Source: Mustelus asterias
Lineage: Eukaryota
Assembly (NCBI RefSeq): GCF_964213995.1
Contig: NC_135804.1
Coordinates: 69,936,001 to 70,000,000, forward strand
Length of the DNA stretch: 64,000 bases
Direction of reading: 5' to 3'
Each line of letters starts with the position of its first letter. Position 1 is the first letter of the stretch. Below are positions 21,237-59,899 of this stretch, piece by piece. Under the pieces are notes generated by a model. That model worked only from the letters and a program-made list of their open reading frames with translations. It was not told the origin of the DNA and searched no databases. The position numbers and the translations under genes were made by a program.

Positions 21237-21291
21237 ATGTTGGCCAGTGTGGCAATTCCTTGCATTACTGTTCTCGGAATCATTTTCACAG
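21237..21291 (+). CDS. Gene A exon 1: signal peptide MLASVAIPCITVLGIIFT
   Basis: ATG 21237, hydrophobic leader, phase-1 donor G|gtattt; homologous to gene B leader (VLGIIFT vs VLGIIYE). Confidence 0.8.
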
Positions 21292-21444
21292 GTATTTGCT
21301 CCTATTATGCTTTGTTTTCTCATTCAATCGCGTAGTTACGTATCTTTGTTTTGATGCAGCATGTTTCATTGTCCTTTACAAATATTATCTGAACTCCTTT
21401 CCCTCACTCTTTCCTATTGTTACATTTTTACATTTTTCCCATAG

Positions 21445-21765
21445 GTCCCGGTGGAACTTCAGTCAGAGTCACTCAGCTCCCTGAGAGAGTGAACACAAAC
21501 ACCGGTACGAACATTTCCTTTCATTGCTCGCTTCCCTTCTTTCAAGACGGCCCACGTGTGAATGTAAACTGGTGGAAAAAGGGTGACAATCAATATCTAA
21601 GGTCAGGACAAAATGACAGAATAATAACTGGTTTCAAGACTAAATTCAGCGGCTTTCTTCGGATAATTAATGTAAATGTGCAGGACACAGGAGTATACTA
21701 TTGCATTGTCACGCATCTAAACAAAACAGCTGGAAATGGAACTGGATCTAATTTAACAGTATGGG
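21445..21765 (+). CDS. Gene A exon 2: Ig V-set domain with joined J-like G strand
   Basis: cccatag| acceptor; VTQ, FHC, WWK, DTGVYYC, GNGTGSNLTV; phase 1/1, 321 nt, donor gtacgt. Confidence 0.92.
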
Positions 21766-22617
21766 GTACGTATAAAAAAATGTAAATAAGATCCATCTGA
21801 CTGCAATATTTCACACTTCGAAACATAGATTTTGATTTAAAGAATTCAACTTTTTAATTAATTTCAATGATCAATATGTATACATTCCAATTGCACTGGT
21901 GATTGCTGCATGCTGGTGTATGTTGCAATGTTTCAAAAATAATGATAAAGCCGAACATTTTCTGCTAAATGTTTGATCCCGACGTATATTCAACAAACAA
22001 TTGAAGTTAAAATTTCCATATTGGATAAGTTGCATACCTCGGCATTAATAGACAGTGTTGCGGACCCGATAAAGAGAACGCACATTTCTTATCCTATTTC
22101 GTGGTATAATTCGCCTACGTTGATTGCGGAGGGTTGTGTGCTTCTATTAGGGCCAGCTGTTCCACTGGTTGATGGTCTATTTCTTAAGGTCATATTTTTA
22201 ACGGTTGAATTACACACCGTCTAATTTGAACCAAACCCTCCTCATCTTTCACCCATCATTTTAGGCTCCAGCAAGCGCGAAATCATCCGGGTTCTTGGTG
22301 CAAAGTCTAACTAACTTGAGAAATTAAACTTCCCAGATAGTTTTTAGATTTAATGGGATGAAATTCACCCGCAGTGGAACCGCAAAATTAGCGAACATCC
22401 CAAATTACACCGTGAGCAATGTTCTTCCGCATTAGAATAGACGATTGGGCGAGATTTTTATTGGGTACAAACTCGCTTTCTCTCGTGTGTTTCTTTTTTT
22501 TTATTTGTCCCCATGAAAACTGTTTAAATTACAAGCAAAATACCCGCGACACGTGAGAATGTCGTCAGATTTAATTGTCGCTACAGATAGTGCAATCTAA
22601 ATAACTATTCTCCCATT

Positions 22618-22760
22618 GCTGTTCCTTCGTCAGATGGAGTGGAAATATGGAGCCAGATTTCCACTCCATCTGACGAAGGAGCAGCGCTCCGAAAACTAGT
22701 GGCGTTTGCTACCAAATAAACCTGTTGGGCTTTAACCTGGTGTTGTTAGACTCCTTACTA
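22618..22760 (+). mobile_element. Short PLE pLTR fragment with hammerhead core and 29-bp inverted arm
   Basis: CTGACGAAGGAGCAGCGCTCCGAAA...CAAATAAACCTGTT matches 17011-17090; arms 22618-22646 / 22657-22685 with one mismatch. Confidence 0.85.
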
Positions 22761-23113
22761 CGATTTTGACGAGCAGGGGAGCTATCCACAGTTATCCCCA
22801 AGTTATCTTCGGTGTCCAGGCCAATATTTCTCCTTCATCAACATCACACAAGCATACGAACTGATCATGATCACGTTTGATTTGATTTGATTTATTATTG
22901 TCACATGTATGAGCATGCAGTGAAAAGTATTGTTTCTTGCGTGCACGCTGCTGTTTCTGGAAATTTCCTGTTCACAGATTTGCTGCCAAATGTTCATCGT
23001 TACAAAAGTGACAGCATTTGAATTGTTCTGCATTGATTGCTGGGCGTTTGAGACGTCTGGTGGTGTGAAACGTGTTATATAACTACCAGTCTTTATATTT
23101 TTTATTGTTCTAG

Positions 23114-23425
23114 TTCCACCAACCCCATTGAAAATTAAACCTCAGCAACTTGAAACGGATCCAGCTGCACCGCTGACTCTTCTGTGCACCACATCTCCTT
23201 TTTCCCCGAAGAATATCAGTTTCACTTGGTATAAGGATGGCACTATAACTAAAATAGGGATCAATACCATCATTAAACCCAGCACCAATGGACTCTATGA
23301 CGCTTCCAGCCAGTTGCAAGAGGCGCAGCCTGCCCGGTCCCTAACTGTTTATACCTGTCTGGTCTTTCACAGTGCGCTCCAAATTCCAGCCATAACCACT
23401 CACATTGTCACCTACCCAAACACAG
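23114..23425 (+). CDS. Gene A exon 3: Ig C1-set domain
   Basis: ttctag| acceptor; LTLLC..FSPKNISFTWYK, NGLYDASSQL, YTCLVFHSAL; phase 1/1, 312 nt, donor gtaaga. Confidence 0.92.
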
Positions 23426-24459
23426 GTAAGATTTCAGATATAATCATATAAATTTACAGTTTTGCAAAACGTTATTTCACTCAGCCTTTCGGTGCAGCCT
23501 CTTTGAAAGAGCTGTCAGATCTATTACGCCGACAGCAGCATTTCTCCCACAACCGGCAAATCAGAATCATTAGCCTTTACATCCAATTGCCTTTTGGAAA
23601 TAGCTATATAAATTATTTCCAGCAAAATTTCAGGCAGTACGTTCTAAATCTTCACAATCTCGGGTTGGAAAATAATTCTCCCCACAGCCCCTTTATTATT
23701 TGCCAATGGTTTTCGATTCAGAACTATTCATGAGACCCACTTTTTGCAGAACACATTTTCCCCTAATTGATAAAATACACCTGTCATAGTTTTGCAAACT
23801 TTCCGTTCGATCTCACCTTAACATTTTCCTATTCTGTTGAAAAGAACCATAGTTCCAAATCTCGCCACGTAGCCGAAGGCCCTCATCCTTGTTAAACCTG
23901 GAAAACATCCTTTGTTATTCTCTCCGAGACATTGGCATTATTCCTAATATGAATTGTACACTGTACATTTGTATGACTTCCATGTATACAATGGTTCACT
24001 CGCACGGCTAATTATCCGAAAATTTTCACTGATCAACATTTCAACTTCCCAACCACCATTTGAAGATCTATAGGTATCTCAGAATTTACATTGCCTGAGA
24101 TTATCTACGTTGATTTAAGCAAAATGCACACTTCATAATTATTTGCATTAAATTGCACTTGCCAGTTGTGACCACTTTCCCTGTTCTATGAAGTGCTGAA
24201 GTCTGCTGCTATCGTCATAATAGTGACCAATGTTGTAGGATTTATAATCTTCAAATTGTACTCCCATATCATATAAAGAAATAGTCCTAATGTTGAACCC
24301 AGATCCAGTCAAAAACAACAACTTACCACTGCTCTCTACTACCTATAATTTAGCCAATAATGTATCTAAAGTGCCACCGTTCATCAAATCCCAAGTGGTT
24401 ATTTAAACATAATAAAAGCACCCCTCGACATTTTTATTTTGGTTCATAATACTTATTTT

Positions 24460-27400: not shown

Positions 27401-28080
27401 CTCTCCAAATTTTGCCACAAGCCCCCAGATGTTAGTATGGATGACATTGCAGGGTCAATAAGGTTGTTGTCAGTGCTTAAATCAATGCCGAGCCGTCCGT
27501 TCGGTTTCAGTCCTCTTTGACTTTCAAGCAGTTTGTTACAACTCAGTGACTTGCTGGAACATTTCAGAGAACATTTAAGAGAGAGCTTTGGGCCTGCAAT
27601 TGCATGTAGGCCAGATCAGGTTTCCTTTCCTAAAGGTGAAGCATATTGGTATTTCTGACAAAATTAATTCCAAATTCTAATAATTGAATTTAAATTCCAC
27701 CAGCTAGTTTGGTGGGATTTGAACTCATCCCCAGTGCATTAGCTTGGATCTCTTGATTGCTAGCCCAGTAATATTATCTGACACGGTTGGGATGTTTCCT
27801 CTTGTGAGTGAGTCCTGAGCTAGGGGAGACTGTTTTAAAATTAGGCGTTGTCCTTTTAGGACAACGATTAGCATCTTTATTTTCTCCTTAAAACATATCA
27901 ACTCAGAAAGCCATTGAATATTTTAAAGATGGATGTGGATAGATTCTTGTTAGGAAAGGGAATCAAAGGTTATCGGGGTAAATGGGAATGTCGACTTCAA
28001 AACACAAACAGATCAACCAGGATCAAATTACGGAGCAGGCTCGAGGGTCAAATGGCCCACGTATGCTCCTTTTTCGTATG
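24460..28080. mobile_element. Cluster of decayed LINE fragments (CR1 + strand ~24790-25810; unclassified APE-RT LINE pieces on - strand)
   Basis: Degenerate DFQKAFD / PHLE-type and DITIPGY-type translations with many stops. Confidence 0.6.
27016..27097. repeat. 29-bp tandem repeat, ~2.8 copies
   Basis: CAGGGT(A/G)CATTCTGTGACATTGCCACATG units starting at 27016, 27045, 27074. Confidence 0.9.
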
Positions 28081-28217: not shown

Positions 28218-28328
28218 GCGATCAGAGCACCAATTTCTTATTGATTTCTGCATCGGCAGGAGGCGGGTTCGTTCTCCTGATGTTGGGTCTCATTATTGTG
28301 ACGCATTGTGTCACAAAGAAAAATAATG
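28218..28328 (+). CDS. Gene A exon 4: transmembrane (uncharged)
   Basis: cttgcag| acceptor; DQSTNFLLISASAGGGFVLLMLGLIIVTHCVTKKNN; phase 1/1, donor gtaaga. Confidence 0.85.
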
Positions 28329-29979: not shown

Positions 29980-30023
29980 GTATGCAGAAAGATGGTGAAA
30001 GATGTCATTATCTGGAACAGCAG
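29980..30023 (+). CDS. Gene A exon 5: short cytoplasmic exon GMQKDGERCHYLEQQ
   Basis: ttcctag| acceptor, CAG|gtatgt donor; 44 nt converts phase 1 to phase 0 as the last exon requires. Confidence 0.7.
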
Positions 30024-31540: not shown

Positions 31541-31559
31541 TAAGATCGAGGATCCACCT

Positions 31560-37649: not shown

Positions 37650-38189
37650 AGACTCGGTCCACCCTCTGGGTACTGGTGCCGGAGGGATGGGACTCTGCCG
37701 GGATGCAATGGAAAGTAGTGATTTCATTTAATTCTGGATTCTGGGCATTCTGCAGAGGGAGTACATGACAAGAGGTTTTTTTTAAATTGTCTTTCAGTTC
37801 ATTCAGGGACCTGTCGAAATGTTGCCACCTTATGCTGCACCAGATACGACCAAATCCCAAAAAACTCCAAGACATCAAGAATAGGCACCATACATCCAGG
37901 TAGGATCGAGCAAAGACGCGGAATGCGTAATTAACAAGTAGTGTATGGGAAAATACATTTAATACTGCTTTGCTACTTCTGTTTGCGTTAGCACTAATTC
38001 TGAGACACTCCCGCTATTATGTCAGTTATAGCTCCGTTTGGCTTCAGAGCCACAAGATTGTAGGATATAGCCTACTCAGGAGACTTGAGAGTAAAGTATA
38101 ATTTGGCACTCCTGTGCATTACTGAGGGAAGTCTGCATTACCTGAAGTACCGTATTTCAAAGGAGACGTTAGACTGAGACTCTAGTTAT

Positions 38190-38932: not shown

Positions 38933-39100
38933 ACCAAGCAAAGACTACCCAATAATAAGCTGACGTATGCTGCTCTAGATATGATAGGGTCAAAGAAAGC
39001 AGCAAAGCCAAATCATAAGGATAAAAGCACGGAATATGCTGAGCTAAAGATGGAAAAACAAAGAGCAGGAGTTATCTACATCGAACCGAAAGCCACCTGA
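38933..39100 (+). CDS. Gene A exon 6: cytoplasmic tail with ITIM/ITSM-like motifs, stop codon
   Basis: ctcacag| phase 0; TKQRLPNNKLTYAALDMIGSKKAAKPNHKDKSTEYAELKMEKQRAGVIYIEPKAT*. Confidence 0.85.
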   Translation, partial: TKQRLPNNKLTYAALDMIGSKKAAKPNHKDKSTEYAELKMEKQRAGVIYIEPKAT

Positions 39101-39662: not shown

Positions 39663-40905
39663 AAACAAAGAACAAGAACAAAGAACAATACAGCACAGGA
39701 ACAGGCCCTTCGGCCCTCCAAGCCCGCGCCGCTCCCGGTCCAGGATTGAATCCTGGATCCCCGCCCAATTTTCCAGCCTATCTACATCCTAATATCCTAT
39801 CCACCGAGCTGTCCCTCACAGCTACGATGCTTTGTTCATCACAACCTATTAACTCACCGCCACCCCCCCATTCCAGACCATGTGATCTCCAGGGAGAGGC
39901 GAAAACCCAGAGTGAAAACCCCAGGGCCAATATGGGGGAAAAAAAAATCTGGGAAATTCCTCTCCGACCCCCTGTGGCGATCGAAACTAGTCCAGGAGAT
40001 CACACTGGCCCTGATCAGAAAATGCTTCCCAACCCTATTCATTTCCACTTCTGCTTTACGAACACCATCTGAATTCCCTGCCCCCGAGACAGGTTCCCAA
40101 CTATCCGCAGTCTCGCTCTGTACTGGCACCAGCAAGATGATCATAGAATGAAGCCTTGAAACGAGAAACAAAGAGCAATTAGCCCGCGCTGCTCCCTGGT
40201 TCAAACTAGACCACTCTTTTGTATCCCTCCATTCCCACTCCGTTCATATAGCTGGCTAGATAAGTCTTAAACGTTCCCAGTGTGTCCGCCTCCACCACCT
40301 TGCCCGGCAACACATTCCAGGCCCCCACGACCCTCTGTGTAAAATATGTCCTTCTGATATCTGTGTTAAACCTCCCCCCCTTCACCTTGAACCTATGACC
40401 CCTCGTGAACGTCACCACCGACCCGGGGAAAAGCTTCCCACCGTTCACCCTATCTATGCCTTTCATAATTTTATACACCTCTATTAAGTCTCCCCTCATC
40501 CTCCGTCTTTCCAAGGAGAACAACCCCAGTTTCCCCAATCTCTCCTCATAACCAAGCGCCTCCATACCAGGCAACATCCTGGTAAACCTCCTCTGTACTC
40601 TCTCCAAAACCTCCACGTCCTTCTGGTAGTGTGGTGACCAGAACTGGACGCAGTATTCCAAATGCGGCCGAACCAACGTTCTATACATCTGCAACATCAG
40701 ACCCCAACTTTTATACTCTATGCCCCGTCCTATAAAGGCAAGCATGCCATATGCCTTCTTCACCACCTTCTCCACCTGTGACGTCACCTTCAAAGATCTG
40801 TGGACTTGCACACCCAGGTCCCTCTGCGTCTCTACACTCTTTATGGTTCTTCCATTTATCGTGTAGCTCCTCCCTACATTATTCCCACCAAAATGCATCA
40901 CTTCG
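39663..40905 (-). mobile_element. Young 5'-truncated CR1 with extended 3' UTR
   Basis: Open ORF2 C-terminus 40206-40905; (TGTTCTT)n tail near 39663-39690. Confidence 0.9.
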
Positions 40906-42887
40906 CAAACGAATGAGCCAGAAAGAAACAACTAATGAAATATGATTTAGATTGCGCTTTGCGCAAACTCAGCTGCTCCCAAACGCCGTCACACTGAAGT
41001 CATTTTCAAGTGTAGTCAAAATTGTCGGATTGGGAATGTCAGTAACAGCACAGCAGGATCCCACAGATGTACGATTAGCTAACTGTTCCAGTGGTCTTTT
41101 TTGACAGTTAACTATTGGCCGGGACACGAGGAGAACGTTGTTGTTCTTCTGCAGACAGTGGAAGTCCGATGGGTGCTCTGACATAAATTCCTTCCAATCT
41201 ATCGAGAGAATGGCTTGCAATTAACTTTCTTCCATCTCCTGCAACGAAACATTTGGTGGCACCTAACATTGCCTGACTTCATCATTGTCTCAGCTCATTT
41301 GCTGCAGACACATTCATTCATGCCTTTGATAACAGACTAGGCTGTCCCGATTCTTGTAGTTTCCTCACATTCTGTCCTGTGTAAAATTGAGGTCGTCCAA
41401 AACATGGCATTCCATGTGATAGCTTCCAGCAATATCGTTCTCTTATCATTCCCGTACTGGCTAAATCACATTGGTTCCCGGTTTCGTGATTTAAAACTCC
41501 CCATCTTTGTTTTTAAATCCCCTCTGTCATATTTCTGCAACCTCCAACAATCCCCCAAAAGATCTGAGTTCCACTGATTCCAGCGTCTTGTTTCAACTCC
41601 AGTTTACAACTATTGCCTCGGCCCAAACTACGGGATTTTCTCTCTCCACCTCTCCGGTTCTCTTCCTCCTTTTCAGCTTTTAAAACAGTCATTCAAACCT
41701 ATGCCTTCGAACAAATTTTCGTAATTTGACCTAACTTCTCCACATGTGGTTGGCTGTTATTCTCTGTTTCATAAAGCTCCAGTGAAGCACCTTGGGATAT
41801 TAAACATGCCCTCTAAATTTCAGTGGTGATTGTTGTTATGGTGGTACTGCTTCCTGCATTTAGTTTGAAAGTTTGTACAAAAATGAATTACATATTTTTT
41901 CAAAGATAGCTAAATGCAGAATTCGAAAGGAAATCCAAGCAATAGCACCAGAGGGCAAAATATCACAAAACAAATACAAATAGTTTCGTTTTTTAGAAAA
42001 TGTATTTTGGAATGTAAGGTTTTTTACTCAGAAGATAAATAGCCATTCAAAAGGGGCAAAAGAGGCGCAACCGTTAGGTGTATTATACATATGCGTCGAT
42101 GATGGACTATTGGCGCGACAAGTCTCGATGGCCGATTGGTCTTTACTGGCGTTTTTCCTTTTTTTTACTTTGTTATTATGAATTTATCTATAACTTAATT
42201 TCCAATTTATCACTGTTATTCGAGTGTTAATATTCAGAGATGAAAAGTATATGATAGATTATATAACATGGATGTAGTTCGTTGAGTTTCTTTTTTCATA
42301 ATATGTATTCTTCTTACATTATATGAAATTGTCAGGTAAAGATAATGTATATCATATTGCTTTCTGAGACACTTCCAGGTTGCAGTTGCTGTAACATTAA
42401 ATTTGCAGATAATTTATCAACATTCGCATCAAAAATTTTTTAAAGAAATGTAAAAATGTTAAGCAAAAATCATGCAATTGAATAACAAGATATCAGCACG
42501 AAAATTCAACCGTGGTTTAATCAGGAAGTTAAGGGTAGTATTAGACTTTTTAAAGAGGTTTATGAAGTTGCATAGAATAGTGATATATCTTGGACTGGAA
42601 GTGTTTTGGAAACCATCAAAGGTGTTTAAAATGTTGATTTTAAAAGCGAAAAAAATAGATTATGAGAGCAAACGATCAAGGAATGTAAAAACAATTTGGA
42701 AGCGCTGTTACAAGTGTATAAAACGCAAGAGGATAGTTATCTTATTACGAGAGATATAATAAAAGAGGAGGGAGTATTTGCTCTAGTTATATAGGGCATT
42801 GGTTCAGCCACATTCTGAGTTCCGTTTACAGTAAGATATAAATACCTTGGAAGCACTTCAGAGAAGGTTTACTACATTAATAGCTGG

Positions 42888-43322
42888 AACAAAGAACAAA
42901 GAACAGTACAGCACAGGAAACAGGCCCTTCGGCCCTCCAAGCCTGTGCCGCTCCTTGGTCCAACTAGACCAATCGTTTGTATCCCTCCATTCCCAGGCTG
43001 CTCATGTGACTATCCAGGTAAGTCTTAAACGATGTCAGCATGCCTGCCTCCACCACCCTACTTGGCAGCGCATTCCAGGCCCCCACCACCCTCTGTGTAA
43101 AAAACGTCCCTCTGATGTCTGAGTTATACTTCGCCCCTCTCAGCTTGAGCCTGTGACCCCTCGTGATCGTCACCTCCGACCTGGGAAAAAGCTTCCCACT
43201 GTTCACCCTATCTATACCCTTCATAATCTTGTATACCTCTATTAGATCTCCCCTCATTCTCCGTCTTTCCAAGGAGAACAACCCCGTCTACCCAATCTCT
43301 CCTCATAGCTAAGACCCTCCAT
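42888..43322 (-). mobile_element. Young CR1 3' fragment nested in an older + strand CR1 (~42700-43770)
   Basis: ORF2 C-terminus and tail; flanks continue EALQRRFTTLIAG...YQVEFRR. Confidence 0.85.
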
Positions 43323-44692
43323 GGATGCGTTACCTTTTGAAAAAAGGCTGGACAGACGAGGCTTGTATCAGGTGGAGTTTAGAAGAGTAAAAGGCGACTT
43401 GATTGAAACAGAATATACTGAGGGGACTTGACAGGGTAGATCTGGAAAGAATGATTATTCTTGTGGGAGAATCTAAAACTTGGGTCACTGTTTAAAAATA
43501 AGGGGTCTCCAATTTAAGGCAGAGATTAAAAAGAAATGTCTCAAGGGATGTGAGACTTTGAAATATCTCTTGCTCAATTAAGTGTTTTGGCAGTGTCCTT
43601 GAATATCTTTAAGGCAGCGGTAAGTAGTTTCATGGTAAGAAATGGGGTGAAAAGGTACAAGGGGAAGGACAGAATGCTGTTTCGAGGTTAAAATCGGATC
43701 AGCAATGATCTCAATGCATTTTGGGGAGGGGCCGAGTTACCCATTTTAGCTCCTGATTCCGATGTTTGCAAGTTCGTCTTCAACAAATAGCTGGTTGTCT
43801 GTATTCACAGCAGGAAACACAAGTTGCATATCAGAAATGAAGGGCAAAATAGGTGCTAAATGCGCGCGAAACCTACGGTTGTTAATAACAGCAAAGAGCC
43901 AAGGCCCGAGAAAATTAAATGGATGAAAATCCGGGAAATCTTCACGCCTGCACTGGAAGGTTTTAAAAGTCACGGCTGCAGAGATTCGGGACGCGCTGTC
44001 CATGAGTTTTGAAACTTCTCTCAATACTGGAAAGGTGCCAACAGGTTGGATGTTGATAAATATAACACCAGTAAAAACTGGAATTGAAGCCCAAGATCAG
44101 CCATTATCGTGTTGAAGATAATTGGCAGTTTCGATGGACCTTATAGTGTACTCCTGTTCTTGTATTATTGATCCAGGCTGTAAGATGCACATGCTGTTGT
44201 GTAAACATTCCACAGACATCGCCGTGCAGGGCCCTGATTATTTTTGTGGGTCTTACCTGCAGAACGAGGGCTGAAGGTGTGGCGGCGTCAACTCAAGGGT
44301 CTTAAATAGATCATGAGGAACTGGGGGAAATATCAGACTGCGTTTCCTGATCTTGTGCAGAGTTTATAATATAATAAGCAAGGAAAGTGAGAATGCCGGA
44401 CCAATGCCGAGGCTTTTGGTGAAGCACATTAAGCTTGAAGAAATATAGAGAAATAACAGGACAGGAAAAGCAAAGATGACTACGTAGTGCCTTTCAACCC
44501 ATCGGAACTGCAACCCACCCTCCCCCACTATCACCCCCACCCCTCCCGCTCCACACACCCAAGTCTCCCAGCCCACCCCACCCCCCGCTTACACACCCCC
44601 GAACTATCCACATCCCGAAAAAAACAAGGAAACTTTTCAAACAATGAAGTATGCCCGACGCATTATTACGGAACTGTAGAAAACACTTCGAC

Positions 44693-45576
44693 TTAGAACA
44701 TAGAACATTACAGCGCAGTACAGGCCCTTCGGCCCTCGATGTTGCGCCGAACAGTGGTACCAAACTAAAGCCCCTCTAATCGACACTATTCCAATATCAT
44801 CCATATGTTTATCCAATAACCACTTGAACGCTCTCAACGTTGACGAGTCCACCTTTGCTGCAGGCAGGGCATTCCACGCCCTTACTACTCTCTGAGTAAA
44901 GAACCTACCTCTAACATCTGTCCTATATCTCTCACCCCTCAATTTAAAGCTATGTCCCGTCGTGCTTGCCAACACCATTCGAGGAAAAAGGCTCTCACTA
45001 TCCACCCTATCTGATCCTCTGATTATCTTGTATGCCTCTATTAAGTCACCTCTTAACCTTCTTCTCTCTAACGAAAACAACCTCAAGCCCCTCAGCCTTT
45101 CCTCATACAATTTTCCCACCATACCAGGCAACATCCTGGTAAATCTCCTCTGCACCCTTTCCAACACTTCCACATCTTTCCTATAATACGGCGACCAGAA
45201 CTGTACGCAATACTCCAAATGCGGCTGCACCAGAGTTTTGTACAGTTGCAGCATGACCTCCTGGCTCCGAAACTCAATCCCTCTACCAATAAAAGCTAAC
45301 ACACCGCACGCCTTCTTAACAACCTTATCAACCTGGGTGCCAACTTTCAGGGATCTATGCACATGGACACCCAGATCCCTCTGTTCATCCACACTACCAA
45401 GTATCTTACCATTAGCCCAGTATTCTGTATTCCTGTTACTCCTTCCAAAGTGAATCACCTCACACTTTTCCGCATTAAACTCCATTTGCCACCTCTCAGC
45501 CCAGCTCTGCAGCTTATCTATGTCCCTCTGTAACCTGCCACTTCCCTCCGCACTGTCTACAACTCCACCGACTTAG
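44693..45576 (-). mobile_element. Young 5'-truncated CR1
   Basis: Open reading frame MEFNAEKC...RPHLEYC-type...FFTQRVV; tail tgttctatgttctaag. Confidence 0.9.
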
Positions 45577-46618: not shown

Positions 46619-49154
46619 CAGTGCTGGATTTAGACTTGGTGAGGCCCGAAGTTATATAAAGATTGGAGGCCCCTTGTTAAAAAGTTACACCAAAAGGTCT
46701 CACAAAGGTGCGTACCAAAACAAGTCTCTTTACCTGTGAAAATGACCTTTCTCCTGAACAATTTGTTACCATCAGGCATAAGAATAGTTGTAATATTGCT
46801 TCCACATTAGGGAAAACTAAATGACCCTTGTCTTGGAAGATGATTTGATACAGATCATTGTGGCAAATTTGTTATTTTCCTGGATAATTCTGTTTGACAT
46901 AAGCATGGGAGTGCTTCAGTTCCCCCGTAAGGTGAATATCAACATCGTTTGGATACTCTTTCATCAAAGTGTCTACTGCTTCACGCAACTGTGCCTCTGA
47001 AGCTTCTAAATCAACTAAAAATGAAATTTTGTTTGCAGCATAATTGTAGGCTGTTGCTCTTCTTCTCAAGTTTGCTTCAAGGACATCGATTATAGGAATG
47101 AAGGATTTCACTCAAAATCTGTCTCTTGGAGACAGCTCTTCATCAGCATCAGGTGCAGCTCCTTCGGAGGCTTGTTTTTTTTTCCTCACCCTCCTCCCTT
47201 TCTCTGCACACTTGTAATCTACATCAGGCAGTTTGGATTTAGCTTCTTGTTCAATATCATCACTGTTTTCTCGAATATTTTTCACAAAGTGGGAAAGTGA
47301 TGTGTACAGATTCGCACATGCGGTAAGTGCAATCTGTGGATCCTGGAGAGCCTTGCTGGTTTTGTGAAACTCCTCCAGCAAACGAGTCCAAAGGTGTAGC
47401 ATAAAAACAAACTCCAGTTTCTCCATTTTTTTCCAGAAGAGTACCAGCTTGTCTTCCTGTCTCACCTTTTTCATTCTCATTAGTATGGAGATGACTTAGA
47501 GCATCGATGATTGATCTGTAACTCTCATTTATGGTAGACACAGCTTTGGCATGTGCATCCCACCTAGTGTCGGACAGATACTTAACATACTTTGGCACAC
47601 TGGAGTCTGCATTCAAGAATGATAACAACACAGCCCACCTTTTTTGTAGAAGATGAAAAAAAGTGTATATTTCTTGCACAACAGCAAAAAGGTTTACTGC
47701 ATCTAAACAGCAATCTACTGTAGCACGGCCAACAAGATTTAGTGAATGTCCGGCACAGGGAATATACATGGCATGCTTGTTTTTCTCTAGAATTCTTTGC
47801 TGCATTCCTTTGTATTTACCAGCCATATTTGCTGCATTATCATATGACTGTCCTCGGCACTTACTGAAATCAACTTTGCAGACTTTACTTAGATAGTCCA
47901 CTACCATACCCGCCATACTTTCACCACTGTGATTTTCCAACTCTGGGAAAGTTAGAAAGCATTCAACAGGTAAACCATCATCAGGTGATACATATCTTAC
48001 TATAACATTTAGTTGATCCACGTGGGAAAGATCTGGTGTCGAGTCCACAGACAAACTGAAGTAGCCTGCTTTTCTCAAATCATCCAAAACTGATTCTCTT
48101 ACTCTATTACTCATAAGCTGAATAAGTTCATCACATATTGTCTTAGATGAATATGAAGGAGACCCAGATCCTCTGTTTCCATATTGTTTTATGTGGTTGG
48201 AAAGAAATGGATCAAACTTAGCAAATAATTCTAACAGGCCAAGGTAGTTGCCATTATTTGGTGATCCAAAAGTTTCATTGTCTCCCCTAAAAGCTAGCCC
48301 ACGTTCTGCTAATGTGCATATCACTGCAACAACACGCTCAAGCACATGTCTCCAGTACTGTTGTTCTGTTTTTATTTGTGCTGCTAGTCTTGAGTCTAAG
48401 GTTGAACCACACTTTCTTGTCAAGTATGTCAGCAAAGCTGTTCTATGCTCTTCAGAGTTTTCATGACATTTAACTGCAATGGGATTTCACCAGTCAGAAA
48501 ACCCACCAGAAGCTAGTGCTGCAGTTGATGTTGAATAGAGCTTGCTGACAAAGCAGTAAACACAGCGAGTTGTTGGGGAGTACACAAGCCATTCCCGATC
48601 GGATATTTCACCATTAAATTTTCTGGACTGAAAATGACCTTTTGAACAATATCTATCTTGATTTTTGAATGGCCACTTTGAGTTTTCAAATGGGCCGTTC
48701 CAGCGTTGACACTCTGAAGGATCCTTAAGGATCCAATATGAGAGTTCATCCTCGGTTAAGACACCCCATTGACCTACAACATTGAGTTTCGTGAATTTTG
48801 TTGTTTCAGCTGTGGATGTCGGCTCTGCAACGTTCACATTTGCATCACTTCCAGTGCTTTCCTCAGCTGAGATTCCAGACTCTGTTGCCTCAGTAGCAGA
48901 GGCACTAGGCTGTGGTTGTTTGGACTTTGCTGATCACCTTGGGTTTGTGGATCCTTATCTGTTTCTGGAGTAAAGTAACTGTCAACTTTTGGTACTTTTT
49001 TGAGTTGCTCTTCAAGCTGGTGCTTTCTTTTCTTTTCTGGTATCCACTCTTAAATGCTCTCTTCATTGTAAACCTTCTGAAATTTTGTGGGGCCCCTGCG
49101 GATTGTGAGGCCCTAAGCTGTAGCTTGTTTAGCTTATGCCTAAATCCGGCACTG
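46619..49154 (-). mobile_element. hAT DNA transposon (ZMYM1/DUF4371-like transposase), decayed
   Basis: TIRs CAGTG(C)(T/C)GGATTTAG at both ends; 8-bp TSD cctccggc/cctcttgc (6/8); inserted in an L2-like fragment. Confidence 0.85.
46700..49066 (-). pseudogene. hAT transposase, frameshifted
   Basis: WLVYS..VYCF, LAFRG, GNYLGLLEL, VDSTPD, GQSYDNAANM, PCAGHSLNL, TRW across several frames. Confidence 0.85.
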
Positions 49155-54117: not shown

Positions 54118-54163
54118 ATGTCTGCATGTCAATGCGTATGGGTCCTGGGAATTATTTACGAAG
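54118..54163 (+). CDS. Gene B exon 1: signal peptide MSACQCVWVLGIIYE
   Basis: ATG 54118, phase-1 donor G|gtattt as in gene A. Confidence 0.75.
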
Positions 54164-54242
54164 GTATTTTCCACCACAACTTGTTTTCTCCTTTAGAATC
54201 TTCTAATCCTGTTTTCTTTTTCATCCGTGTGTCCGCTTATAT

Positions 54243-54377
54243 NNNNNNNNNNNNNNNNNNNNNNNNNNNNNNNNNNNNNNNNNNNNNNNNNNNNNNNNNN
54301 NNNNNNNNNNNNNNNNNNNNNNNNNNNNNNNNNNNNNNNNNNNNNNNNNNNNNNNNNNNNNNNNNNNNNNNNNNNNN
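54243..54377. other. Assembly gap (N run) in gene B intron 1
   Basis: Run of N. Confidence 1.
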
Positions 54378-54432
54378 ACGGTTAAAGTACAATTTATTCA
54401 TATGTAACAACTACATTTTAAATATTTTATAG

Positions 54433-54744
54433 TTGCATCCACCTCGGTGTCGCAATCGCCTGAAAGCACCATTCTGATGGCAGGTTCAGACATTACCTTC
54501 CACTGCACAGCGAACTCTGTCCAGCTTCACTCAAATGTGGATGTTTATTGGTGGAAACTTGGCGATGAAACCTTATTAGAACCGAATTCTGATGGCAGAA
54601 AGCGATTCTTTCCTTTTAAAAGCGGAGCGACTTCTTTCCAGATCCTGAATGTCCGTGTCTCCGACTCCGGATCCTATTACTGCGGAGTGCGAGACACAGG
54701 CAGCAAGATACTCAATGGAACTGGATCCAAACTTGTTGTGCACG
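54433..54744 (+). CDS. Gene B exon 2: Ig V-set domain with joined J-like G strand
   Basis: ttttatag| acceptor; VSQSP, FHC, YWWK, DSGSYYC, NGTGSKLVV; phase 1/1, 312 nt, donor gtaaga. Confidence 0.92.
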
Positions 54745-55842
54745 GTAAGAGACATGGGGCATCTGTCATTGTAGGACGCTATATAGAAGATCAGAGACAG
54801 TTTTGATTAATCAGGGGGATTAACAGGGCAAATTTGTGGGGTTATGGGGATAGGGCTTGGGAGGGATTGTTGTCGGTGCAGACTCGATGGGCCGAATGGC
54901 CTCCTTCAGCACTGTAGTATTCTATTATTCTGTAATCAGTGAATTGATTTCTAATGTTAGTTTGTGGAAGAGGATTAGGGAACATTATTTAAAGTCGGGC
55001 CTAAAACCATACCACAATCCGCACCCATTGTTTGTTATGCATCTATATTCTACCTGTTTATTAGCGCAGGGTTCCAAGGCATTATTTAGATGAGGGATTT
55101 TACCTAAAAATGCCGTATGTGGTAGCAAAAAGGACCTTGATTGGCGATATGGATAGAACACAAAACATTTTTGTTACGAGGGTCTGTACTTTACAATTCT
55201 ATTGCAGAATCCTCGGGTTTGATATTCCTGTGGTACCACCTTCAAAGATTATAATAGCAAGATTACTCAAACTGATCGGCATATGAAACCGATCAGTTCG
55301 CTGTCGATTGGAATTAATTAGAGGGCTGGATTATAAAAGAAGTACTGATACCAATGACAGCAAGACGCCGTTCCTCATCCGGGGTGTTTGACACATACAT
55401 GGTTAAAACTTTAGATAATACGAATTCGAGTATATTCCAGGTAACTGGAAACACAGTCCGTTTCCGATCATTTCTGGAAATTAGATCTGATACTCGCTTG
55501 GCATATGACTGTGGAATCCAACCTGTGGATTTTACGGCGCCACTTCGTGAGGTCAGACCAGATCTATAGTTACTTTTGCTTCGTGTTAGGATTGAAACAA
55601 AAAGCTGCACTGCTCGTTCCCCTCCCCTTCGCAGTTCCACGGTTCATCCCTTCAAACGTCAATTGTTGCCATGTCCTTCCAATCAAATTTGCAGCAATTT
55701 CCCATTTTTCCCCTTTAAAATATTGAACACCATATGATTAATATTCTGCACATTAAGATTATCGTGAGACCAATGTATCACTTCTCTTGGCCGTAAGAAT
55801 TTCTCCCCTTGCTACAGAAATAGAAGCCTTAAGTCAATCAAT

Positions 55843-56040
55843 CATAGAAATCATAGAATCATAGAAACCCTCCAGTGCAGAAGGAGGCCATTCGGCCCAT
55901 CGAGTCTGCACCGACCACAATCCCACCCAGGCCCTACCCCCACATATTTTACCCGCTAATCCCTCTAACCTACGCATCCCAGGACTCGAAGGGGCAATTT
56001 TTTTTTAACCTGGCCAATCCACCTAACCCGCACATCTTTG
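55843..56040 (-). mobile_element. SINE 3' fragment
   Basis: HE1-type 3' half with (ATCATAGA)n tail. Confidence 0.8.
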
Positions 56041-56484
56041 AATTAATATGAATTAATATTATCTACATGAGTTTTGTTTATTTACATGGTGCGTAATCAT
56101 AATGATTAAATATTTCTGAATAAATATCAAAACATATGCCTTTGTTTTTCCATTTGAAATTTGGTATTCTTGCCTTTGCCCAGATGAGTGCAAAATATGA
56201 AGCTTCCACAGCATGCTTCTTTCTACGGGCAATATTTATTTACGAGACCAAAACCAACCTGAATGTCTTGCGCATTACTTTCTGCTGGTACTGTAATATT
56301 GTTCATTAGTGTTCGCATATTAGTCTAGAATTTGTAATGGGAATTTAAATGTAACGTTTTGTCGTGATTTAGTTTGGTTCCTGCGACCAAAATCCATCTG
56401 ACCATCGCAAGGTAGACTGGATCTTAAAGGGGAATAAGGTACACAAGTACAAACCGTCAGTGTTTTCGTTTCGCTGTTCCACAG

Positions 56485-56793
56485 TTTCCCCAGAACCCAT
56501 AAGACTGATCCCCAAGGTTTCCCGTACCAACTCATCTACTCGAACACTTGTGTGTGAAACGGCTGAGTTCTACCCAGAGTCTGTCACCTTCATTTGGTAT
56601 AAAAACGACAGCAACATTGTGACTGGGATCAGCACCATTCAAACGGTGAACGCAGAGGGGGAATATGAAGCTTCCAGTACTTTGGAAATGGAAGATCCAG
56701 CTCAGAGCGGTATTGTGTATACCTGTGTGGTGTCTCACCTCACACTGCAGTATCCAATCACGGCTGTTTACTTGGACTCCATTTCTAATTCAG
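56485..56793 (+). CDS. Gene B exon 3: Ig C1-set domain
   Basis: ccacag| acceptor; TLVCETAEFYPESVTFIWYK, GEYEASSTL, YTCVVSHLTL; phase 1/1, 309 nt. Confidence 0.92.
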
Positions 56794-57448
56794 GTAAGAT
56801 GCCAATCTTTGTACAGATGTAGTCGGTCACCGTTTGCTATGTATCCACGTTAATGTCGTTCAATCCTCTGAACTTAATTACGTTCATTTAAAGACTGGTT
56901 CGTCTTGGGGATTTGTAAAGCGGACAAAGGAGGGAAAGAGAGCGATCTATTACGAATATTATCCATTACCCAATTTCATTCAGATTCAATGGTTTGCCAT
57001 TTAACGCAGAACAAAGGAATACATGGAAAGTCTTTTCACTCATGACTTTAGAATTTCCTCGTTATGACAAGCTGCTAATACCCTTGTATAGATATTCCAC
57101 TTTATGAGACACATCACCCTGCACTCATGTGGCTGTAATTTTCGACATGTGCCTAGCTGTAAAATTCCTGGTTTTTGTGTCAATGGAAATGCAAACGATA
57201 CGTGTTTATTGATGTAATACAAACAGGGGATGTAATCAGCTGATTGTGAAGTCAGAATCAATAACAGTACCAGGTCATGTGAGTTAAAAGTCTTCGGCTC
57301 TGTTACTGAAAAATATTTGCAATATATTTTATTCAATAGACTGGTTCCGTATCACTTCCTTCAACGGGAAAATGGTAATTGATTATTCATATTAATAGCA
57401 ATAATTATATTACGTTCGCTGTTTTCACTATCATTATGATTTTCACAG

Positions 57449-57562
57449 ATCCTGGGCACACTACCATTTATCTACAGATTTCTAAATATGCAGGAGCTGT
57501 ATTGATATTTCTAGCCCTGAGCGCTTTCATTATGAAGAGCGACCAACTCCGTAACTGTAATG
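57449..57562 (+). CDS. Gene B exon 4: transmembrane with Lys
   Basis: ttcacag| acceptor; DPGHTTIYLQISKYAGAVLIFLALSAFIMKSDQLRNCN; donor G|gtaagg; aligns with gene A TM exon. Confidence 0.85.
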
Positions 57563-58427
57563 GTAAGGAGCCAACCAAGTTGCTTATCTTTGATACAAGC
57601 GAATAATTAATCCAATCGAGAGCATACCTCCCACCACACTGTTTTAACCCAGTATTACTACAAAAACGCAAGTATTCTTTGAAGCTTTTTCCTCTCGAGC
57701 AGATATTCTGAAACGACAAAGATGAAAATGGAAATATCTTGATTAACAACGTTCATCGCATTGAGTAGGCGTCAGACCAAACTACTTCCGACAACTTGCT
57801 CTGAATACTCTGCTCACATTTTGACAGCTGTGACATATTCCACCCCAGCCGCTCAGCCAATCCATAACATTCTAACACGATTAACGACATTCTAAATAAA
57901 AAAGTCAATCTGTCGTATCTCGCATTGTCAACTGATGCTTTCTTTGAAATAAACTAATCAGTTCTTCCTTGCGCCGTATCCCATCTGTATACCAAATTTT
58001 AATAATATCCATTCATTAGTTTCTGAAATGAATTATTTATAAACGTTTTAGCAGACTAACTATCAGACAAGAATATTCCATCCGCCCACCTATAGTGACA
58101 GGAGGCAACGAAGAAACAACATAACAGGGAGGAAAGAAGGAAATGTTCAATCTGATCCAGGAATGGAAATTTAATGATATGTGAACTGTTCCATTGGAAC
58201 CACAACCTGAAACAAATAAATTGCCAATCAAATGAACATAAAGTAATGATTAAGGAGTAGCGATGTTTTGTTGGTTTCATTTTTGGTGACGTTTTGAAGT
58301 TTGAAGTATAAATTGCGTCTTCGGGGCCGAATGCATTGAAGGAACCTTAAGATGGGATTTTTCTGTCCTGTGATCCTCAAGGCGGCAGTGGTTAAAGTTC
58401 AGCCGGATCCACTTCACGAGATATATA

Positions 58428-58735
58428 TCATAGAAATCATAGAAACCCTACAGTGCAGAAGGAGGCCATTCGGCCCATCGAGTCTGCACCGACCACAATC
58501 CCACCCAGGCCCTACCCTCACATATTTACCCGCTAATCCCTCTAACCTACACATCTCAGGACTCTAAGGGGCAATTTTTAACCTGGCCAATCAACCTAAC
58601 CCGCACATCTTTGGACTGTGGGAGGAAACCGGAGCACCCGGAGAAAACCCACGCAGACACGAGGAGAATGTGCAAACTCCACACAGACAGTGACCCGAGC
58701 CGGGAATCGAACCCAGGACCCTGGAGCTGTGAAGC
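58428..58735 (-). mobile_element. V-domain SINE, 5' clipped
   Basis: Family motifs; joined directly to a CR1 ORF1 fragment. Confidence 0.85.
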
Positions 58736-59362
58736 GGGAGGAAGACACGTGGGTCACAGTTAGGAGGGGTAATAGTCAGAAGGGTGATGTGCCAGAAAGT
58801 ACCCCAGTGGCAGTCTCCCATAAAAGAAAGGGATGGGCAACAGATGGGAGAAGGGAAGAGAGTGAGCAGTCTGTGGAGGGATCCCCTGTGGTTGTCCCCC
58901 TCCAAAATAGGTATATTGTTTTGGATTCAGTGGAGGGGGATGACCCTCCAGGGGTAAGCCACGAGGACCAGATCGCCTCCACGGAGACAGGCTCAGGGGT
59001 CCGGAAGGGAAAGAAGGGGTTTAGGAGAGCGATAGTTGTGGGGGACGCAATGGTTAGAGGCACGGACAGGCGGTTCTATGGGAGTGAACGAGAATCCAGG
59101 ATGGTAGTCTGCCTCCCTGGTGCCGGAGTACTGGATGTCTCCGAGAGGGTAGGAAGCATATTTAAAAAGGAAGGTAGTCAAACGGATGTGATTATACACA
59201 TTGGTGAAAATGATGTAGGTAGGAAGAGCAGGGGGGTCATACGAGAGAAATTCAGGGAGTTGGGTGCTAGGCTAAAAAGTAAAGTCTCCAGGGTAGCAAT
59301 CTCTGGACTGCTCCCGGTGTCTAGGGCAAGTGAGGCTCGGAACAGGGAGATTCTACAGTTGA
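58736..59362 (+). mobile_element. CR1 ORF1 (esterase) fragment
   Basis: VPLQNRY, VVGDAMVRGTDRRF, CLPGA, HIGEND, ISGLLP. Confidence 0.85.
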
Positions 59363-59864
59363 AAGAAATTTTCACCGTCTATGAGATTTCTGATATTACA
59401 TCGGATAACAGTCCACAATCTGAAAACATAGAATTTCAAGAGTTTGCAAAACCCCTTTGGATTTATTTGCACAAACTCACCAGGATTTCCATGGGTTACT
59501 GGAGAAGCAGAGAAATGTGTCATGGAATCATAGAATCCCTACAGTGCAGAAGGAGCCCATTCGGCCCATCGAGTCAGCACCGACCAGAATCCCACTGGGG
59601 CCTATTCCCGCAACCCCTCATAATTACCGGCTAATCCTCCTGACACTATGGTTAATTTAGCATGGCCAATCAACCTAACTCGCACATCTTTATCCAAAAT
59701 GTAAAGTCATTACTGCATAGAAAACAGATTTTCAACTCCGGCTCTTGGGTTATCTATTCTCAGCCCTTCAGAGTGGATTGGTTCCCTGGGGGTTCCTCAT
59801 GGAATCCAATGGAACGTGGTTTTGGGCATATATTTCTGCCGTTCCACATACATTGATGCCACAG

Positions 59865-59899
59865 GTCAACGATGCAGATTTATAGAAAGAACATGTTAG
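59865..59899 (+). CDS. Gene B candidate terminal exon GQRCRFIERTC*
   Basis: ccacag| phase 1; resembles gene A exon 5 (GERCHYLEQ); ATTAAA at 60080-60085; weak pyrimidine tract. Confidence 0.45.

What the first reader, a model, noticed from the sequence alone, without database searches (positions are those of the whole stretch)
21237..59899. Tandem paired inhibitory/activating VJ-C1 immune receptor genes
Seen: two same-strand paralogues with matching exon architecture and phases (L, V, C1, TM, cyt). Gene A has an uncharged TM and a ~80-aa tail with LTYAAL and TEYAEL. Gene B has Lys in the aligned TM position (ISKYAG vs ISASAG), and I find no tyrosine-motif exon for it in the window. Known: this is the logic of paired receptor families (SIRPalpha/beta, KIR, teleost NITRs, hagfish APAR). 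Inference: a possibly uncharacterised shark-type paired receptor cluster built from antigen-receptor-type domains.
Basis: partly seen in the sequence, partly recalled or inferred. Interest (0 to 1): 0.88.

Follow-up and report, generated by a model that had tools for sequence, protein, structure and literature searches.

The report
Two shark VJ-C1 immune receptor genes
Two neighbouring shark genes encode cell-surface receptors built from antibody-type domains; they belong to a large, unnamed receptor family of sharks, rays and chimaeras, but they are old paralogues and not a matched on/off pair.

Summary
Both genes are real. Each has leader, germline-joined VJ, single C1 and TM exons with phase-1 junctions. 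The N gap lies inside gene B's leader-V intron and costs no coding sequence.

Corrections to the finding:
- Gene A's tail has two more exons, and the one before the LTYAAL/TEYAEL exon carries an in-frame TAG at 37882-37884. Mustelus asterias has Gln there.
- A and B are only 36-39% identical. Each sits in its own well-supported shark-plus-ray clade.
- Gene B's TM Lys recurs in M. asterias but is Gly in five orthologues from four other species. All these orthologues have short tails without tyrosine motifs.

The family is confined to cartilaginous fish: 70 of 72 profile hits, under more than ten automatic names. Across it, Arg/Lys at gene B's TM column arose at least 8 times and goes against ITIM tails. 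The paired-receptor logic therefore holds for the family, not for this gene pair.

No RNA evidence could be obtained. The scan noted similar genes elsewhere in this genome (unchecked).

The parts
17482..17541 (+). Possible upstream alternative first exon of gene A
   Evidence: 20 codons are 95% identical to residues 1-20 of M. asterias P0168 and are followed by GT. Support is by similarity only.
21237..21291 (+). Gene A leader exon (split leader, ends in phase 1)
   Evidence: ATG..CACAG|gtattt; hydrophobic leader. Matches the leaders of P0151 and P0152.
21445..21765 (+). Gene A germline-joined VJ exon
   Evidence: Pfam V-set 1.2e-08. Motifs DTGVYYC and GTGSNLTV lie in one exon, with no heptamer or nonamer nearby. 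79% identical to S. canicula P0003.
23114..23425 (+). Gene A C1-set exon
   Evidence: Pfam C1-set 3.8e-09. 13-residue Cys-Trp spacer, FSP and CLVFH. 99% identical to M. asterias P0168.
28218..28328 (+). Gene A transmembrane exon (uncharged TM, ISASAG), ends in phase 1
   Evidence: 94% identical to P0168.
29980..30023 (+). Gene A cytoplasmic mini-exon (44 bases, phase 1 to 0)
   Evidence: cctag|GT ATG..CAG CAG|gtatgt. 93% identical to P0168 residues 181-195.
37798..37899 (+). Gene A cytoplasmic exon (102 bases, phase 0-0) with an in-frame TAG at 37882-37884
   Evidence: Strong acceptor and a CAG|gtagga donor. 89% identical to P0168 residues 195-229, which have Gln where the window has the stop.
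38933..39100 (+). Gene A last coding exon: ITIM LTYAAL, ITSM-like TEYAEL, stop TGA at 39098-39100
   Evidence: 95% identical to the P0168 C-terminus. The same module is found in many family tails.
54118..54163 (+). Gene B leader exon. The NCBI model of the orthologue starts at an upstream in-frame ATG that corresponds to 54025.
54243..54377 (.). Assembly gap inside gene B's leader-V intron (not filled)
   Evidence: Donor at 54164 and acceptor at 54431-54432. The orthologue protein is continuous across the gap.
54433..54744 (+). Gene B germline-joined VJ exon
   Evidence: Pfam V-set 2.9e-09. DSGSYYC and GTGSKLVV. 98% identical to M. asterias P0189.
56485..56793 (+). Gene B C1-set exon
   Evidence: Pfam C1-set 2.4e-13. 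13-residue spacer, FYP and CVVSH.
57449..57606 (+). Gene B TM exon (57449-57562; Lys codon at 57484-57486) plus read-through to TAA at 57604-57606
   Evidence: M. asterias P0189 has the same Lys and ends with the same read-through residues. AATAAA occurs at 57895, 57948 and 58215.

Best explanation
The window comes from a Mustelus-type shark. It holds two adjacent members of a multigene family found only in cartilaginous fish. Family members are non-rearranging receptors with a leader, a germline-joined VJ domain, one C1 domain, a TM segment and a cytoplasmic tail.

Gene A belongs to the long-tailed, ITIM-bearing lineage. Its ITIM/ITSM exon is intact. In this assembly, however, the exon before it ends in a premature TAG. 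The inhibitory tail is therefore made only if that in-phase exon is skipped, or if the TAG is an allele or a sequencing error.

Gene B belongs to a different old lineage. That lineage has a short tail without tyrosine motifs in every species seen. In Mustelus it has gained a Lys in the membrane span.

Inferred mechanism, not shown:
- The V domain binds an unknown ligand.
- Long-tailed members recruit SH2 phosphatases through phosphorylated ITIM/ITSM motifs.
- Members with Arg or Lys at this TM position couple to an acidic ITAM adaptor.

The inhibitory/activating logic is a property of the family that has re-arisen many times. A and B are neighbours in the cluster, not two forms of one receptor.
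For: Exon models and domain hallmarks:
-.

Orthologues:
- Gene A matches M. asterias P0168 (C1 99%, tail exons 89-95%).
- Gene B matches P0189 (97% over V+C1).

Family limits:
- 51 of 51, 9 of 9 and 70 of 72 hits are chondrichthyan.
- In the profile search the E-value jumps from 2.5e-55 to 1.3e-5 at the family's edge.

Separate old clades:
- win_A lies in a 13-row clade (SH-aLRT 98) and win_B in a 7-row clade (99). Both clades hold sharks and rays.

Tails:
- All six gene B orthologues and isoforms with a TM that I read have tails of about 6-44 residues without ITIM.
- Family tails repeat the module seen in gene A's last exon.

Basic TM residue:
- At least 8 independent changes on the tree. 1 of 12 basic rows has an ITIM tail, against 35 of 59 others.

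Exon skipping is plausible:
- Natural family proteins lack the 102-base exon, for example P0159, P0020 and P0171.
Against: - There is no transcript evidence for this genome.
- The NCBI models may be homology-based, so they may not be independent proof of the junctions.
- The P0168 model has an odd 5' end that skips most of the V exon. Together with the TAG, this could mean gene A is decaying in Mustelus.
- The link between a basic TM residue and the absence of ITIM is not significant once kinship is allowed for (median p 0.125). The Fisher count also includes isoforms and truncated gene models.
- No adaptor, ligand or expression data exist.
- The Lys is Gly in the five gene B orthologues read outside Mustelus, so it may be neutral.
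Confidence: 0.7

Rival explanations
1. A and B are a functional inhibitory/activating pair that see the same or related ligands. A signals through ITIM/ITSM and B through a Lys-coupled ITAM adaptor.
For: - The genes are adjacent, on the same strand and share one architecture.
- Gene A has an intact ITIM/ITSM exon.
- Gene B has a Lys in the TM that is conserved in M. asterias, plus a short tail.
- By accession order, an A-type gene is followed by a B-type gene in Heterodontus as well.
Against: - The V domains are 39% identical and the C1 domains 36%. The split predates the shark-ray divergence.
- Known pairs such as SIRP alpha/beta share about 90% (PMC2785349).
- The Lys is absent from the Scyliorhinus, Heterodontus, Heptranchias and Pristis orthologues.
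- A TAG lies upstream of gene A's motif exon.
Confidence: 0.12
2. Gene A is a pseudogene or a tail-less derivative in this species. Gene B is a non-signalling (decoy, adhesion or ligand-type) molecule whose Lys has no function. In that case the window shows birth-and-death turnover rather than a working signalling pair.
For: - TAG at 37882-37884 where M. asterias has Gln.
- The tyrosine motifs in that exon have already decayed in both Mustelus sequences (PPYAAP; APYIQ / APHIQ). Other species keep ..PYAEL.. and ..TVYAQ.
- The M. asterias model of gene A lacks the leader and most of V.
- The scan noted a neighbouring family gene disrupted by a retrotransposon (s1-891556, unchecked).
- Gene B orthologues lack any signalling motif.
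Against: - All seven other gene A coding pieces are open. The last exon is 95% identical to M. asterias with both motifs intact.
- The stop lies in an in-phase exon that other family genes lack.
- Gene B is intact and 97% conserved.
Confidence: 0.25
3. The genes are the cartilaginous-fish orthologues of SIRP alpha and SIRP beta proper, as NCBI's 'tyrosine-protein phosphatase non-receptor type substrate 1-like' names imply.
For: - SIRP alpha (2wng) is the third-ranked solved structure for the family profile (6.8e-29), and SIRP gamma scores 2e-24.
- The order is V-C1 and the FSP motif matches SIRP alpha d2 (PMC2785349).
- The family contains ITIM tails and Lys or Arg in the TM.
Against: - Each gene has one C1 domain, not two.
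- Per V+C1 unit, antibody light chains score higher (about 87 bits, e.g. 9r2e_L; 69.4 bits in 2rcj_C) than SIRP alpha (61.6). UrIg2 is close behind at 57.2.
- Neither V exon has a SIRP among its best 60 solved-structure hits.
- No bony-vertebrate SIRP was retrieved by the profile search, though that search is limited to proteins sharing exact words.
- The automatic names switch between more than ten families.
Confidence: 0.15
4. A-type and B-type chains pair through their C1 domains into a heterodimeric receptor, in the manner of antigen-receptor chains.
For: - C1-set domains are normally found paired with another domain (PMC2785349, discussion).
- Two old lineages appear to be kept side by side in Heterodontus and Mustelus, judged by accession order.
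- One chain has a signalling tail and the other does not.
Against: - Neither gene has a membrane-proximal Cys.
- The J strand begins with an NGT glycosylation sequon where Ig/TCR have the interface Phe or Trp.
- SIRP alpha has C1 domains without chain pairing.
Confidence: 0.08

Closest known systems
SIRP family (SIRP alpha / beta / gamma) of tetrapods
   Same: - V-set domain with a J-like strand, followed by C1-set domain(s), a TM segment and a tail.
- Inhibitory ITIM forms and forms with a basic TM residue and a short tail occur in one family.
- The FSP / xVxH / 13-residue C1 hallmarks are shared (PMC2785349).
- SIRP alpha is the third-ranked solved structure for the family profile, after two multi-domain immunoglobulin-type chains.
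   Different: - One C1 domain instead of two.
- The A and B ectodomains are 36-39% identical, not about 90%.
- The V+C1 unit scores lower against SIRP alpha (61.6 bits) than against antibody light chains (about 87 bits).
- The tail is built from a repeated module specific to this family.
- Orthology and CD47 binding were not tested.
Immunoglobulin light chains / T-cell receptor chains
   Same: - Split leader, V-J-C1 order and phase-1 exons.
- They are the best sequence matches for the V exons and for the V+C1 unit.
- NCBI names many family members 'immunoglobulin lambda-1 light chain-like'.
   Different: - V and J are fused in the germline, with no recombination signals.
- The proteins have a TM segment and a signalling tail.
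- Asn (the NGT sequon) replaces the J-motif Phe or Trp.
UrIg and UrIg2 of elasmobranchs (Flajnik et al. 2025, PMC12227049; passages read)
   Same: - Non-rearranging VJ exon with a split leader, followed by C1-type domains. Both are found in cartilaginous fish.
- UrIg2 (9dmx) is the top solved-structure hit for both C1 exons.
   Different: - UrIg has a VJ plus three C domains and is secreted. UrIg2 has 9-11 C domains.
- The paper mentions no ITIM (0 occurrences).
- The per-domain scores are ordinary, 22-28 bits.
Teleost NITRs and hagfish APAR (paired receptors with antigen-receptor-like V domains)
   Same: They are families that mix ITIM-bearing members and members with a charged TM, on a VJ-type domain. 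This rests on my recall. For APAR I saw only the title of Suzuki et al. 2005, in a reference list.
   Different: By recall, they lack a C1-set domain and occur in other vertebrate classes.
PRARP genes of birds and other bony vertebrates (Fu et al. 2019) and B7H6
   Same: - PRARP is cited as a non-rearranging VJ gene family (one passage in PMC10751288). By recall it has a V-C1-TM-tail plan.
- Many family members are auto-named as B7H6 (NCR3LG1)-like.
   Different: Neither paper was held and no sequences were available, so the relationship is untested.

Membership tests
C1-set immunoglobulin domain | Exactly 13 residues between the strand-B Cys and the strand-C Trp, (F/Y)(F/Y/H)P or FSP at the BC loop, and xVxH after the strand-F Cys (PMC2785349) | tested here: met
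   Gene A: 13 residues, FSP, CLVFH. Gene B: 13 residues, FYP, CVVSH. Pfam C1-set scores 37.2 and 50.7 bits against a cut-off of 21.
Germline-joined (non-rearranging) VJ domain | V-set domain with DxGxYxC and a GxG(T/S)xLxV J strand in one exon, with no recombination signal sequence | tested here: met
   DTGVYYC with GTGSNLTV, and DSGSYYC with GTGSKLVV. Each pair lies inside one open exon. There is no consensus heptamer or nonamer within about 300 bases (exact matches only).
SIRP family | Ectodomain of V-C1-C1 (three domains) | tested here: not met
   Each gene has one C1 exon. tblastn finds no further C1 copy in the window. Of the family proteins read, only Amblyraja P0024 has two C1 domains.
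SIRP family | Sequence closer to SIRPs than to other V-C1 proteins | tested here: not met
   V+C1 unit scores: light chains about 87 bits (9r2e_L), 2rcj_C unit 69.4, SIRP alpha 61.6, UrIg2 57.2. No SIRP is among the best 60 hits of either V exon. Solved structures only; no tree with SIRPs was built.
SIRP family | Binds CD47; lies at a locus syntenic with the tetrapod SIRP cluster | not testable with these tools
Paired inhibitory/activating receptors | Inhibitory partner: a translated cytoplasmic ITIM (S/I/V/LxYxxI/V/L; consensus as in PMC5071834) | tested here: inconclusive
   LTYAAL and TEYAEL are intact. However, an in-frame TAG at 37882-37884 lies in the preceding exon. Translation would need exon skipping or a different allele, and no RNA data exist.
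Paired inhibitory/activating receptors | Activating partner: a basic residue in the TM and a short tail without ITIM | tested here: met
   Lys codon at 57484-57486, and a read-through tail of about 24 residues without Tyr. The Lys is shared with M. asterias only. Adaptor binding was not tested.
Paired inhibitory/activating receptors | The partners have closely similar ectodomains (recent duplication or gene conversion) | tested here: not met
   39% identity in V and 36% in C1. The two genes lie in separate starred clades that each hold sharks and rays.
Paired inhibitory/activating receptors | The activating form associates with an ITAM adaptor (DAP12 / FcR gamma type) | not testable with these tools
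This needs co-immunoprecipitation.
UrIg / UrIg2 | A VJ domain followed by three or more C1-type domains, with no ITIM signalling tail (PMC12227049) | tested here: not met
   Single C1 exon, a TM segment and an ITIM-type tail.
Rearranging Ig/TCR chains | V and J gene segments separated in the germline by recombination signals | tested here: not met
   V and J are continuous within one exon in both genes.

The most novel reading that the evidence does not exclude
This family of two-domain VJ-C1 transmembrane receptors, found across cartilaginous fish, may be a surviving form of the two-domain VJ-C1 gene that Flajnik et al. (2025, Fig. 2 legend) place at the root of UrIg and the antigen receptors. 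If so, switchable inhibitory versus adaptor-coupled signalling was already attached to antigen-receptor-type ectodomains in early jawed vertebrates. The family would also be an unnamed NK- or myeloid-type receptor system of sharks. In that system a basic residue at one TM position has been gained at least eight times.
Probability: 0.12. Interest if true: 0.8.

Novelty: new member of a known kind. Interest (0 to 1): 0.5.

Why it matters
C1-set domains are almost confined to antigen receptors, MHC molecules and a few relatives. Non-rearranging VJ-C1 genes are the current candidates for what antigen receptors looked like before the RAG transposon invaded.

This report shows that sharks, rays and chimaeras carry a large clustered family of such genes. 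The family has ITIM tails and recurrent charged-TM variants. Genome annotation scatters it over more than ten unrelated names.

A properly defined family would give comparative immunologists two things:
- a candidate innate (NK- or myeloid-type) receptor system in the oldest jawed vertebrates;
- an additional group to include in trees of antigen-receptor origin.

For this particular window the message is more modest. It holds two real family members. One may have been disabled by a nonsense codon. The other carries a lineage-specific Lys.

Tried and rejected
Steps that gave nothing or were rejected:

- RNA evidence. The look-up of sequencing runs found no RNA holder. No junction, the TAG, and gene B's 3' end could therefore not be checked.
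- A second C1 domain or a third family gene in the window. None was found.
It has a weak pyrimidine tract. The only homologue match is a 6-residue chance hit. The M. asterias model ends by read-through instead. Rejected as unsupported.
- A tail exon for gene B like that of Heptranchias or Heterodontus. None was found in the parts of 57563-64000 that I searched.
- Direct splicing of gene A's TM exon to the last exon. The phases (1 and 0) do not fit, and the reading stops after seven codons. This led me to the two missing exons.
- SIRP orthology. Not favoured.
- Special closeness to UrIg2. Its top rank comes from adding three ordinary domain scores.
- Literature. Ten searches found no description of this family. 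The UrIg 2023 paper, the B7H6/NKp30 2012 paper and the Ohta & Flajnik 2015 review were not held. Fu et al. 2019 (PRARP) is not in the library. Supplements were closed. The supplements of PMC12227049, PMC10751288 and PMC3964593 may list such genes.
- Structure prediction and genomic context.
- Spliced model. It was not searched. Each exon was searched on its own, and the two V exons together as a two-row profile.

Full report
**What is in the sequence**

Between 21.2 and 39.1 kb (gene A) and between 54.1 and 57.6 kb (gene B), the + strand carries two genes with the same plan.

- Gene A: leader 21237-21291, V exon 21445-21765, C1 exon 23114-23425, TM exon 28218-28328.
- Gene B: leader 54118-54163, V exon 54433-54744, C1 exon 56485-56793, TM exon 57449-57562.
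- The leaders are split and end after the first base of a codon. All V, C1 and TM exons are flanked by ag and gt and are in phase 1-1.
- Pfam places both first domains in V-set and both second domains in C1-set, above the curated cut-offs.
- The V exons hold DxGxYxC and a J-like GxG(S)xLxV strand in the same exon. No consensus heptamer or nonamer lies nearby, so the genes do not rearrange.
- The C1 exons meet the three sequence hallmarks that Hatherley et al. 2009 use for C1-set domains. These are 13 residues between Cys-B and Trp-C, FSP or FYP, and xVxH (PMC2785349, passages read).
- tblastn finds no other V or C1 copy in the window.
- The rest of the window is transposon debris.

**The assembly gap**

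- The N run 54243-54377 begins 79 bases after gene B's leader donor and ends 55 bases before the V acceptor.
- The orthologous M. asterias protein P0189 runs from its leader residues straight into its V residues. Both parts match the window on either side of the gap, at 93% and 98%.
- The gap is therefore intronic. No coding sequence is missing and the frame is not affected. I did not fill it.

**Gene A's tail**

- The TM exon ends in phase 1, but the LTYAAL/TEYAEL exon (38933-39100) is read in phase 0. The two cannot be joined directly.
- Homologues revealed two further exons:
  - a 44-base exon at 29980-30023 (MQKDGERCHYLEQQ);
  - a 102-base, phase 0-0 exon at 37798-37899.
- The 102-base exon reads FIQGPVEMLPPYAAPDTTKSQKTPRHQE, then TAG at 37882-37884, then APYIQ.
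- M. asterias has Gln at that position.
- As assembled, a transcript that includes this exon ends before the ITIM exon.
- The stop lies 15 bases before the last exon junction. By the usual 50-55-base rule (my knowledge), it should escape nonsense-mediated decay and yield a protein with a tail that lacks ITIM.
- The exon is in phase, and several family proteins lack it altogether (P0159, P0020, P0171, P0172, P0176, P0177, P0181). Skipping it would therefore restore an ITIM/ITSM tail.
- Which of these happens cannot be decided without reads.

**Gene B's tail and Lys**

- The Lys (57484-57486, ISKYAG) is real and is also present in M. asterias P0189.
- The NCBI model of P0189 ends by reading through the TM exon's donor into the same residues that the window encodes, up to the TAA at 57604-57606.
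- The orthologues in Scyliorhinus canicula (P0185, P0215), Heterodontus (P0008, P0190/P0220), Heptranchias (P0175) and Pristis (P0179) have Gly at this position.
- Those orthologues have tails of about 6 to 44 residues without any tyrosine motif.
- This argues against a hidden ITIM exon beyond the window. It also shows that the Lys is a Mustelus novelty.

**Which organism and which family**

- A profile of the two V exons found 1340 proteins at E up to 0.001 among 1.84 billion representatives.
- The single-domain-match hits of 220-500 residues have the same V-C1-TM plan.
- Named examples come from Scyliorhinus, Heterodontus, Callorhinchus, Heptranchias, Mustelus, Amblyraja and Hemitrygon.
- Searches with full-length relatives gave:
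  - 51 of 51 hits from cartilaginous fish;
  - 9 of 9 hits from cartilaginous fish;
  - 70 of 72 hits from cartilaginous fish.
- In one search the weakest family member scores 2.5e-55. The next hits are Mdga1 and an NCAM-like protein, at 1.3e-5 and 5.9e-4.
- That tool only sees proteins sharing exact five-residue words with the query, so distant bony-vertebrate relatives may have been missed.
- The automatic names include SHPS-1-like, SIRP beta-1-like, Ig lambda- or kappa-light-chain-like, tapasin-related, NCR3LG1-like, CD276, PD-L1-like, MHC class II alpha- or beta-like, TCR beta-like and uncharacterised.
- The window's exons are 94-99% identical to M. asterias proteins but not identical to them. 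It therefore comes from a Mustelus or a very close relative.

**Relationship of A to B**

- The V domains are 39% identical and the C1 domains 36%.
- I built a quick maximum-likelihood tree of V+C1 from 69 rows. I dropped six isoform or near-identical rows, and every protein without a species label or without both domains.
- Gene A falls in a 13-row clade (SH-aLRT 98). It contains Scyliorhinus, Heterodontus, Chiloscyllium and Hemiscyllium, and the rays Leucoraja, Hemitrygon and Mobula.
- Gene B falls in a 7-row clade (SH-aLRT 99). It contains M. asterias, Scyliorhinus, Heterodontus, Heptranchias and the sawfish Pristis.
- The two lineages therefore split before sharks and rays did.
- The tree has no outgroup, its support is SH-aLRT only, and four rows have long branches.
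- Accession order suggests that A-type, B-type and a third type keep their relative order in Heterodontus, Heptranchias and Mustelus. This is only a proxy for map order.

**Paired logic at family level**

- In an alignment of the TM exon region (81 rows), gene B's Lys column holds G 28, A 20, R 12, S 6, K 2, and others 13, including three gapped rows.
- Among 71 database proteins with a TM, 12 have Arg or Lys there. Only 1 of those 12 has an ITIM- or ITSM-type motif in its tail.
- Of the 59 without a basic residue, 35 have such a motif (Fisher p 0.0013).
- That count includes isoforms and possibly truncated models, and it ignores kinship.
- On the tree the basic state changes at least 8 times. 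In 8 independent pairs the motif goes the opposite way in 3-5, the same way in 0, and does not differ in 3-5 (median p 0.125).
- The direction fits a paired-receptor family, but the test is underpowered.
- Within gene A's own clade, Heterodontus has ITIM forms with an uncharged TM (P0158). It also has a short-tailed form with Arg at this column (P0149, by C1 similarity only). Hemitrygon has P0011 of that second kind. These are better candidates for true pairs than A and B.

**Comparison with known families**

- The family profile, run against solved structures, ranks as follows:
  - chain 2rcj_C, 4.7e-37;
  - UrIg2, 1e-35;
  - SIRP alpha, 6.8e-29;
  - SIRP gamma, 2e-24;
  - antibody light chains, about 1e-23.
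- The first three gain score from extra C domains.
- Per V+C1 unit the scores are: light chains about 87 bits (for example 9r2e_L, full-sequence score), the V+C unit of 2rcj_C 69.4, SIRP alpha 61.6 and UrIg2 57.2.
- The family is thus about equally far from all V-C1 families and is not specifically a SIRP. It also has one C1 domain where SIRPs have two.
- UrIg and UrIg2 differ in having three or more C domains. The paper describing them mentions no ITIM.
- NITR, APAR and PRARP could be compared only from memory.

**What could not be done**

- No RNA or read evidence was obtained.
- No genomic context in other species was obtained.
- No structure model was obtained.
- Four relevant papers could not be read.
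- Places 58617-58700 were left out of every search. They lie downstream of gene B and outside every exon proposed here.

**Verdict**

- The specific reading, a tandem inhibitory/activating pair, is only partly right.
- Earlier notes of this scan report similar VJ-C1 receptor genes 15 kb beyond the window, 1.9 Mb before it, and on other pieces of this genome. I did not check them.

Noticed in passing
window 37882-37884: An in-frame TAG lies in gene A's penultimate coding exon, where the M. asterias orthologue has Gln. The tyrosine motifs of this exon are already degenerate in both Mustelus sequences. This suggests relaxed constraint on the exon.
   Followed up: partly
window 17482-17541: Twenty codons match the first 20 residues of the M. 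asterias gene A model. They are a possible upstream alternative first exon without a signal peptide. That model then leaves the V exon at an internal GT.
   Followed up: partly
window 21732-21740 and 54714-54722 (J-like strands): Both genes, and nearly the whole family, have an NGT glycosylation sequon where Ig/TCR J segments have Phe or Trp before GxG. This argues against antibody-style V-V pairing.
   Followed up: no
window 595-3402, 14326-16785, 40206-40931, 42964-43281, 44637-45485, 47260-48435: There are long transposon ORFs: a LINE with endonuclease and reverse transcriptase (935 aa), an 819-aa reverse-transcriptase-type ORF that starts right after the N gap at 14154-14317, three LINE tail fragments, and a 391-aa hAT-like transposase. 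I named these by eye; no family search was run.
   Followed up: no
database proteins P0003, P0151, P0216 (Scyliorhinus canicula): These isoform models of both the A-type and B-type orthologues end by read-through of the C1 exon's donor. That would give secreted V-C1 forms.
   Followed up: no
database proteins P0149 (Heterodontus) and P0011 (Hemitrygon): These are members of, or close to, gene A's own clade. They have Arg at gene B's Lys column and short tails without ITIM. They are better candidates for true activating partners of the ITIM forms.
   Followed up: partly
database protein P0024 (Amblyraja radiata): This family member has its C1 domain duplicated (V-C1-C1). It is the only such case among the proteins I read, and it copies the SIRP domain count.
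   Followed up: no
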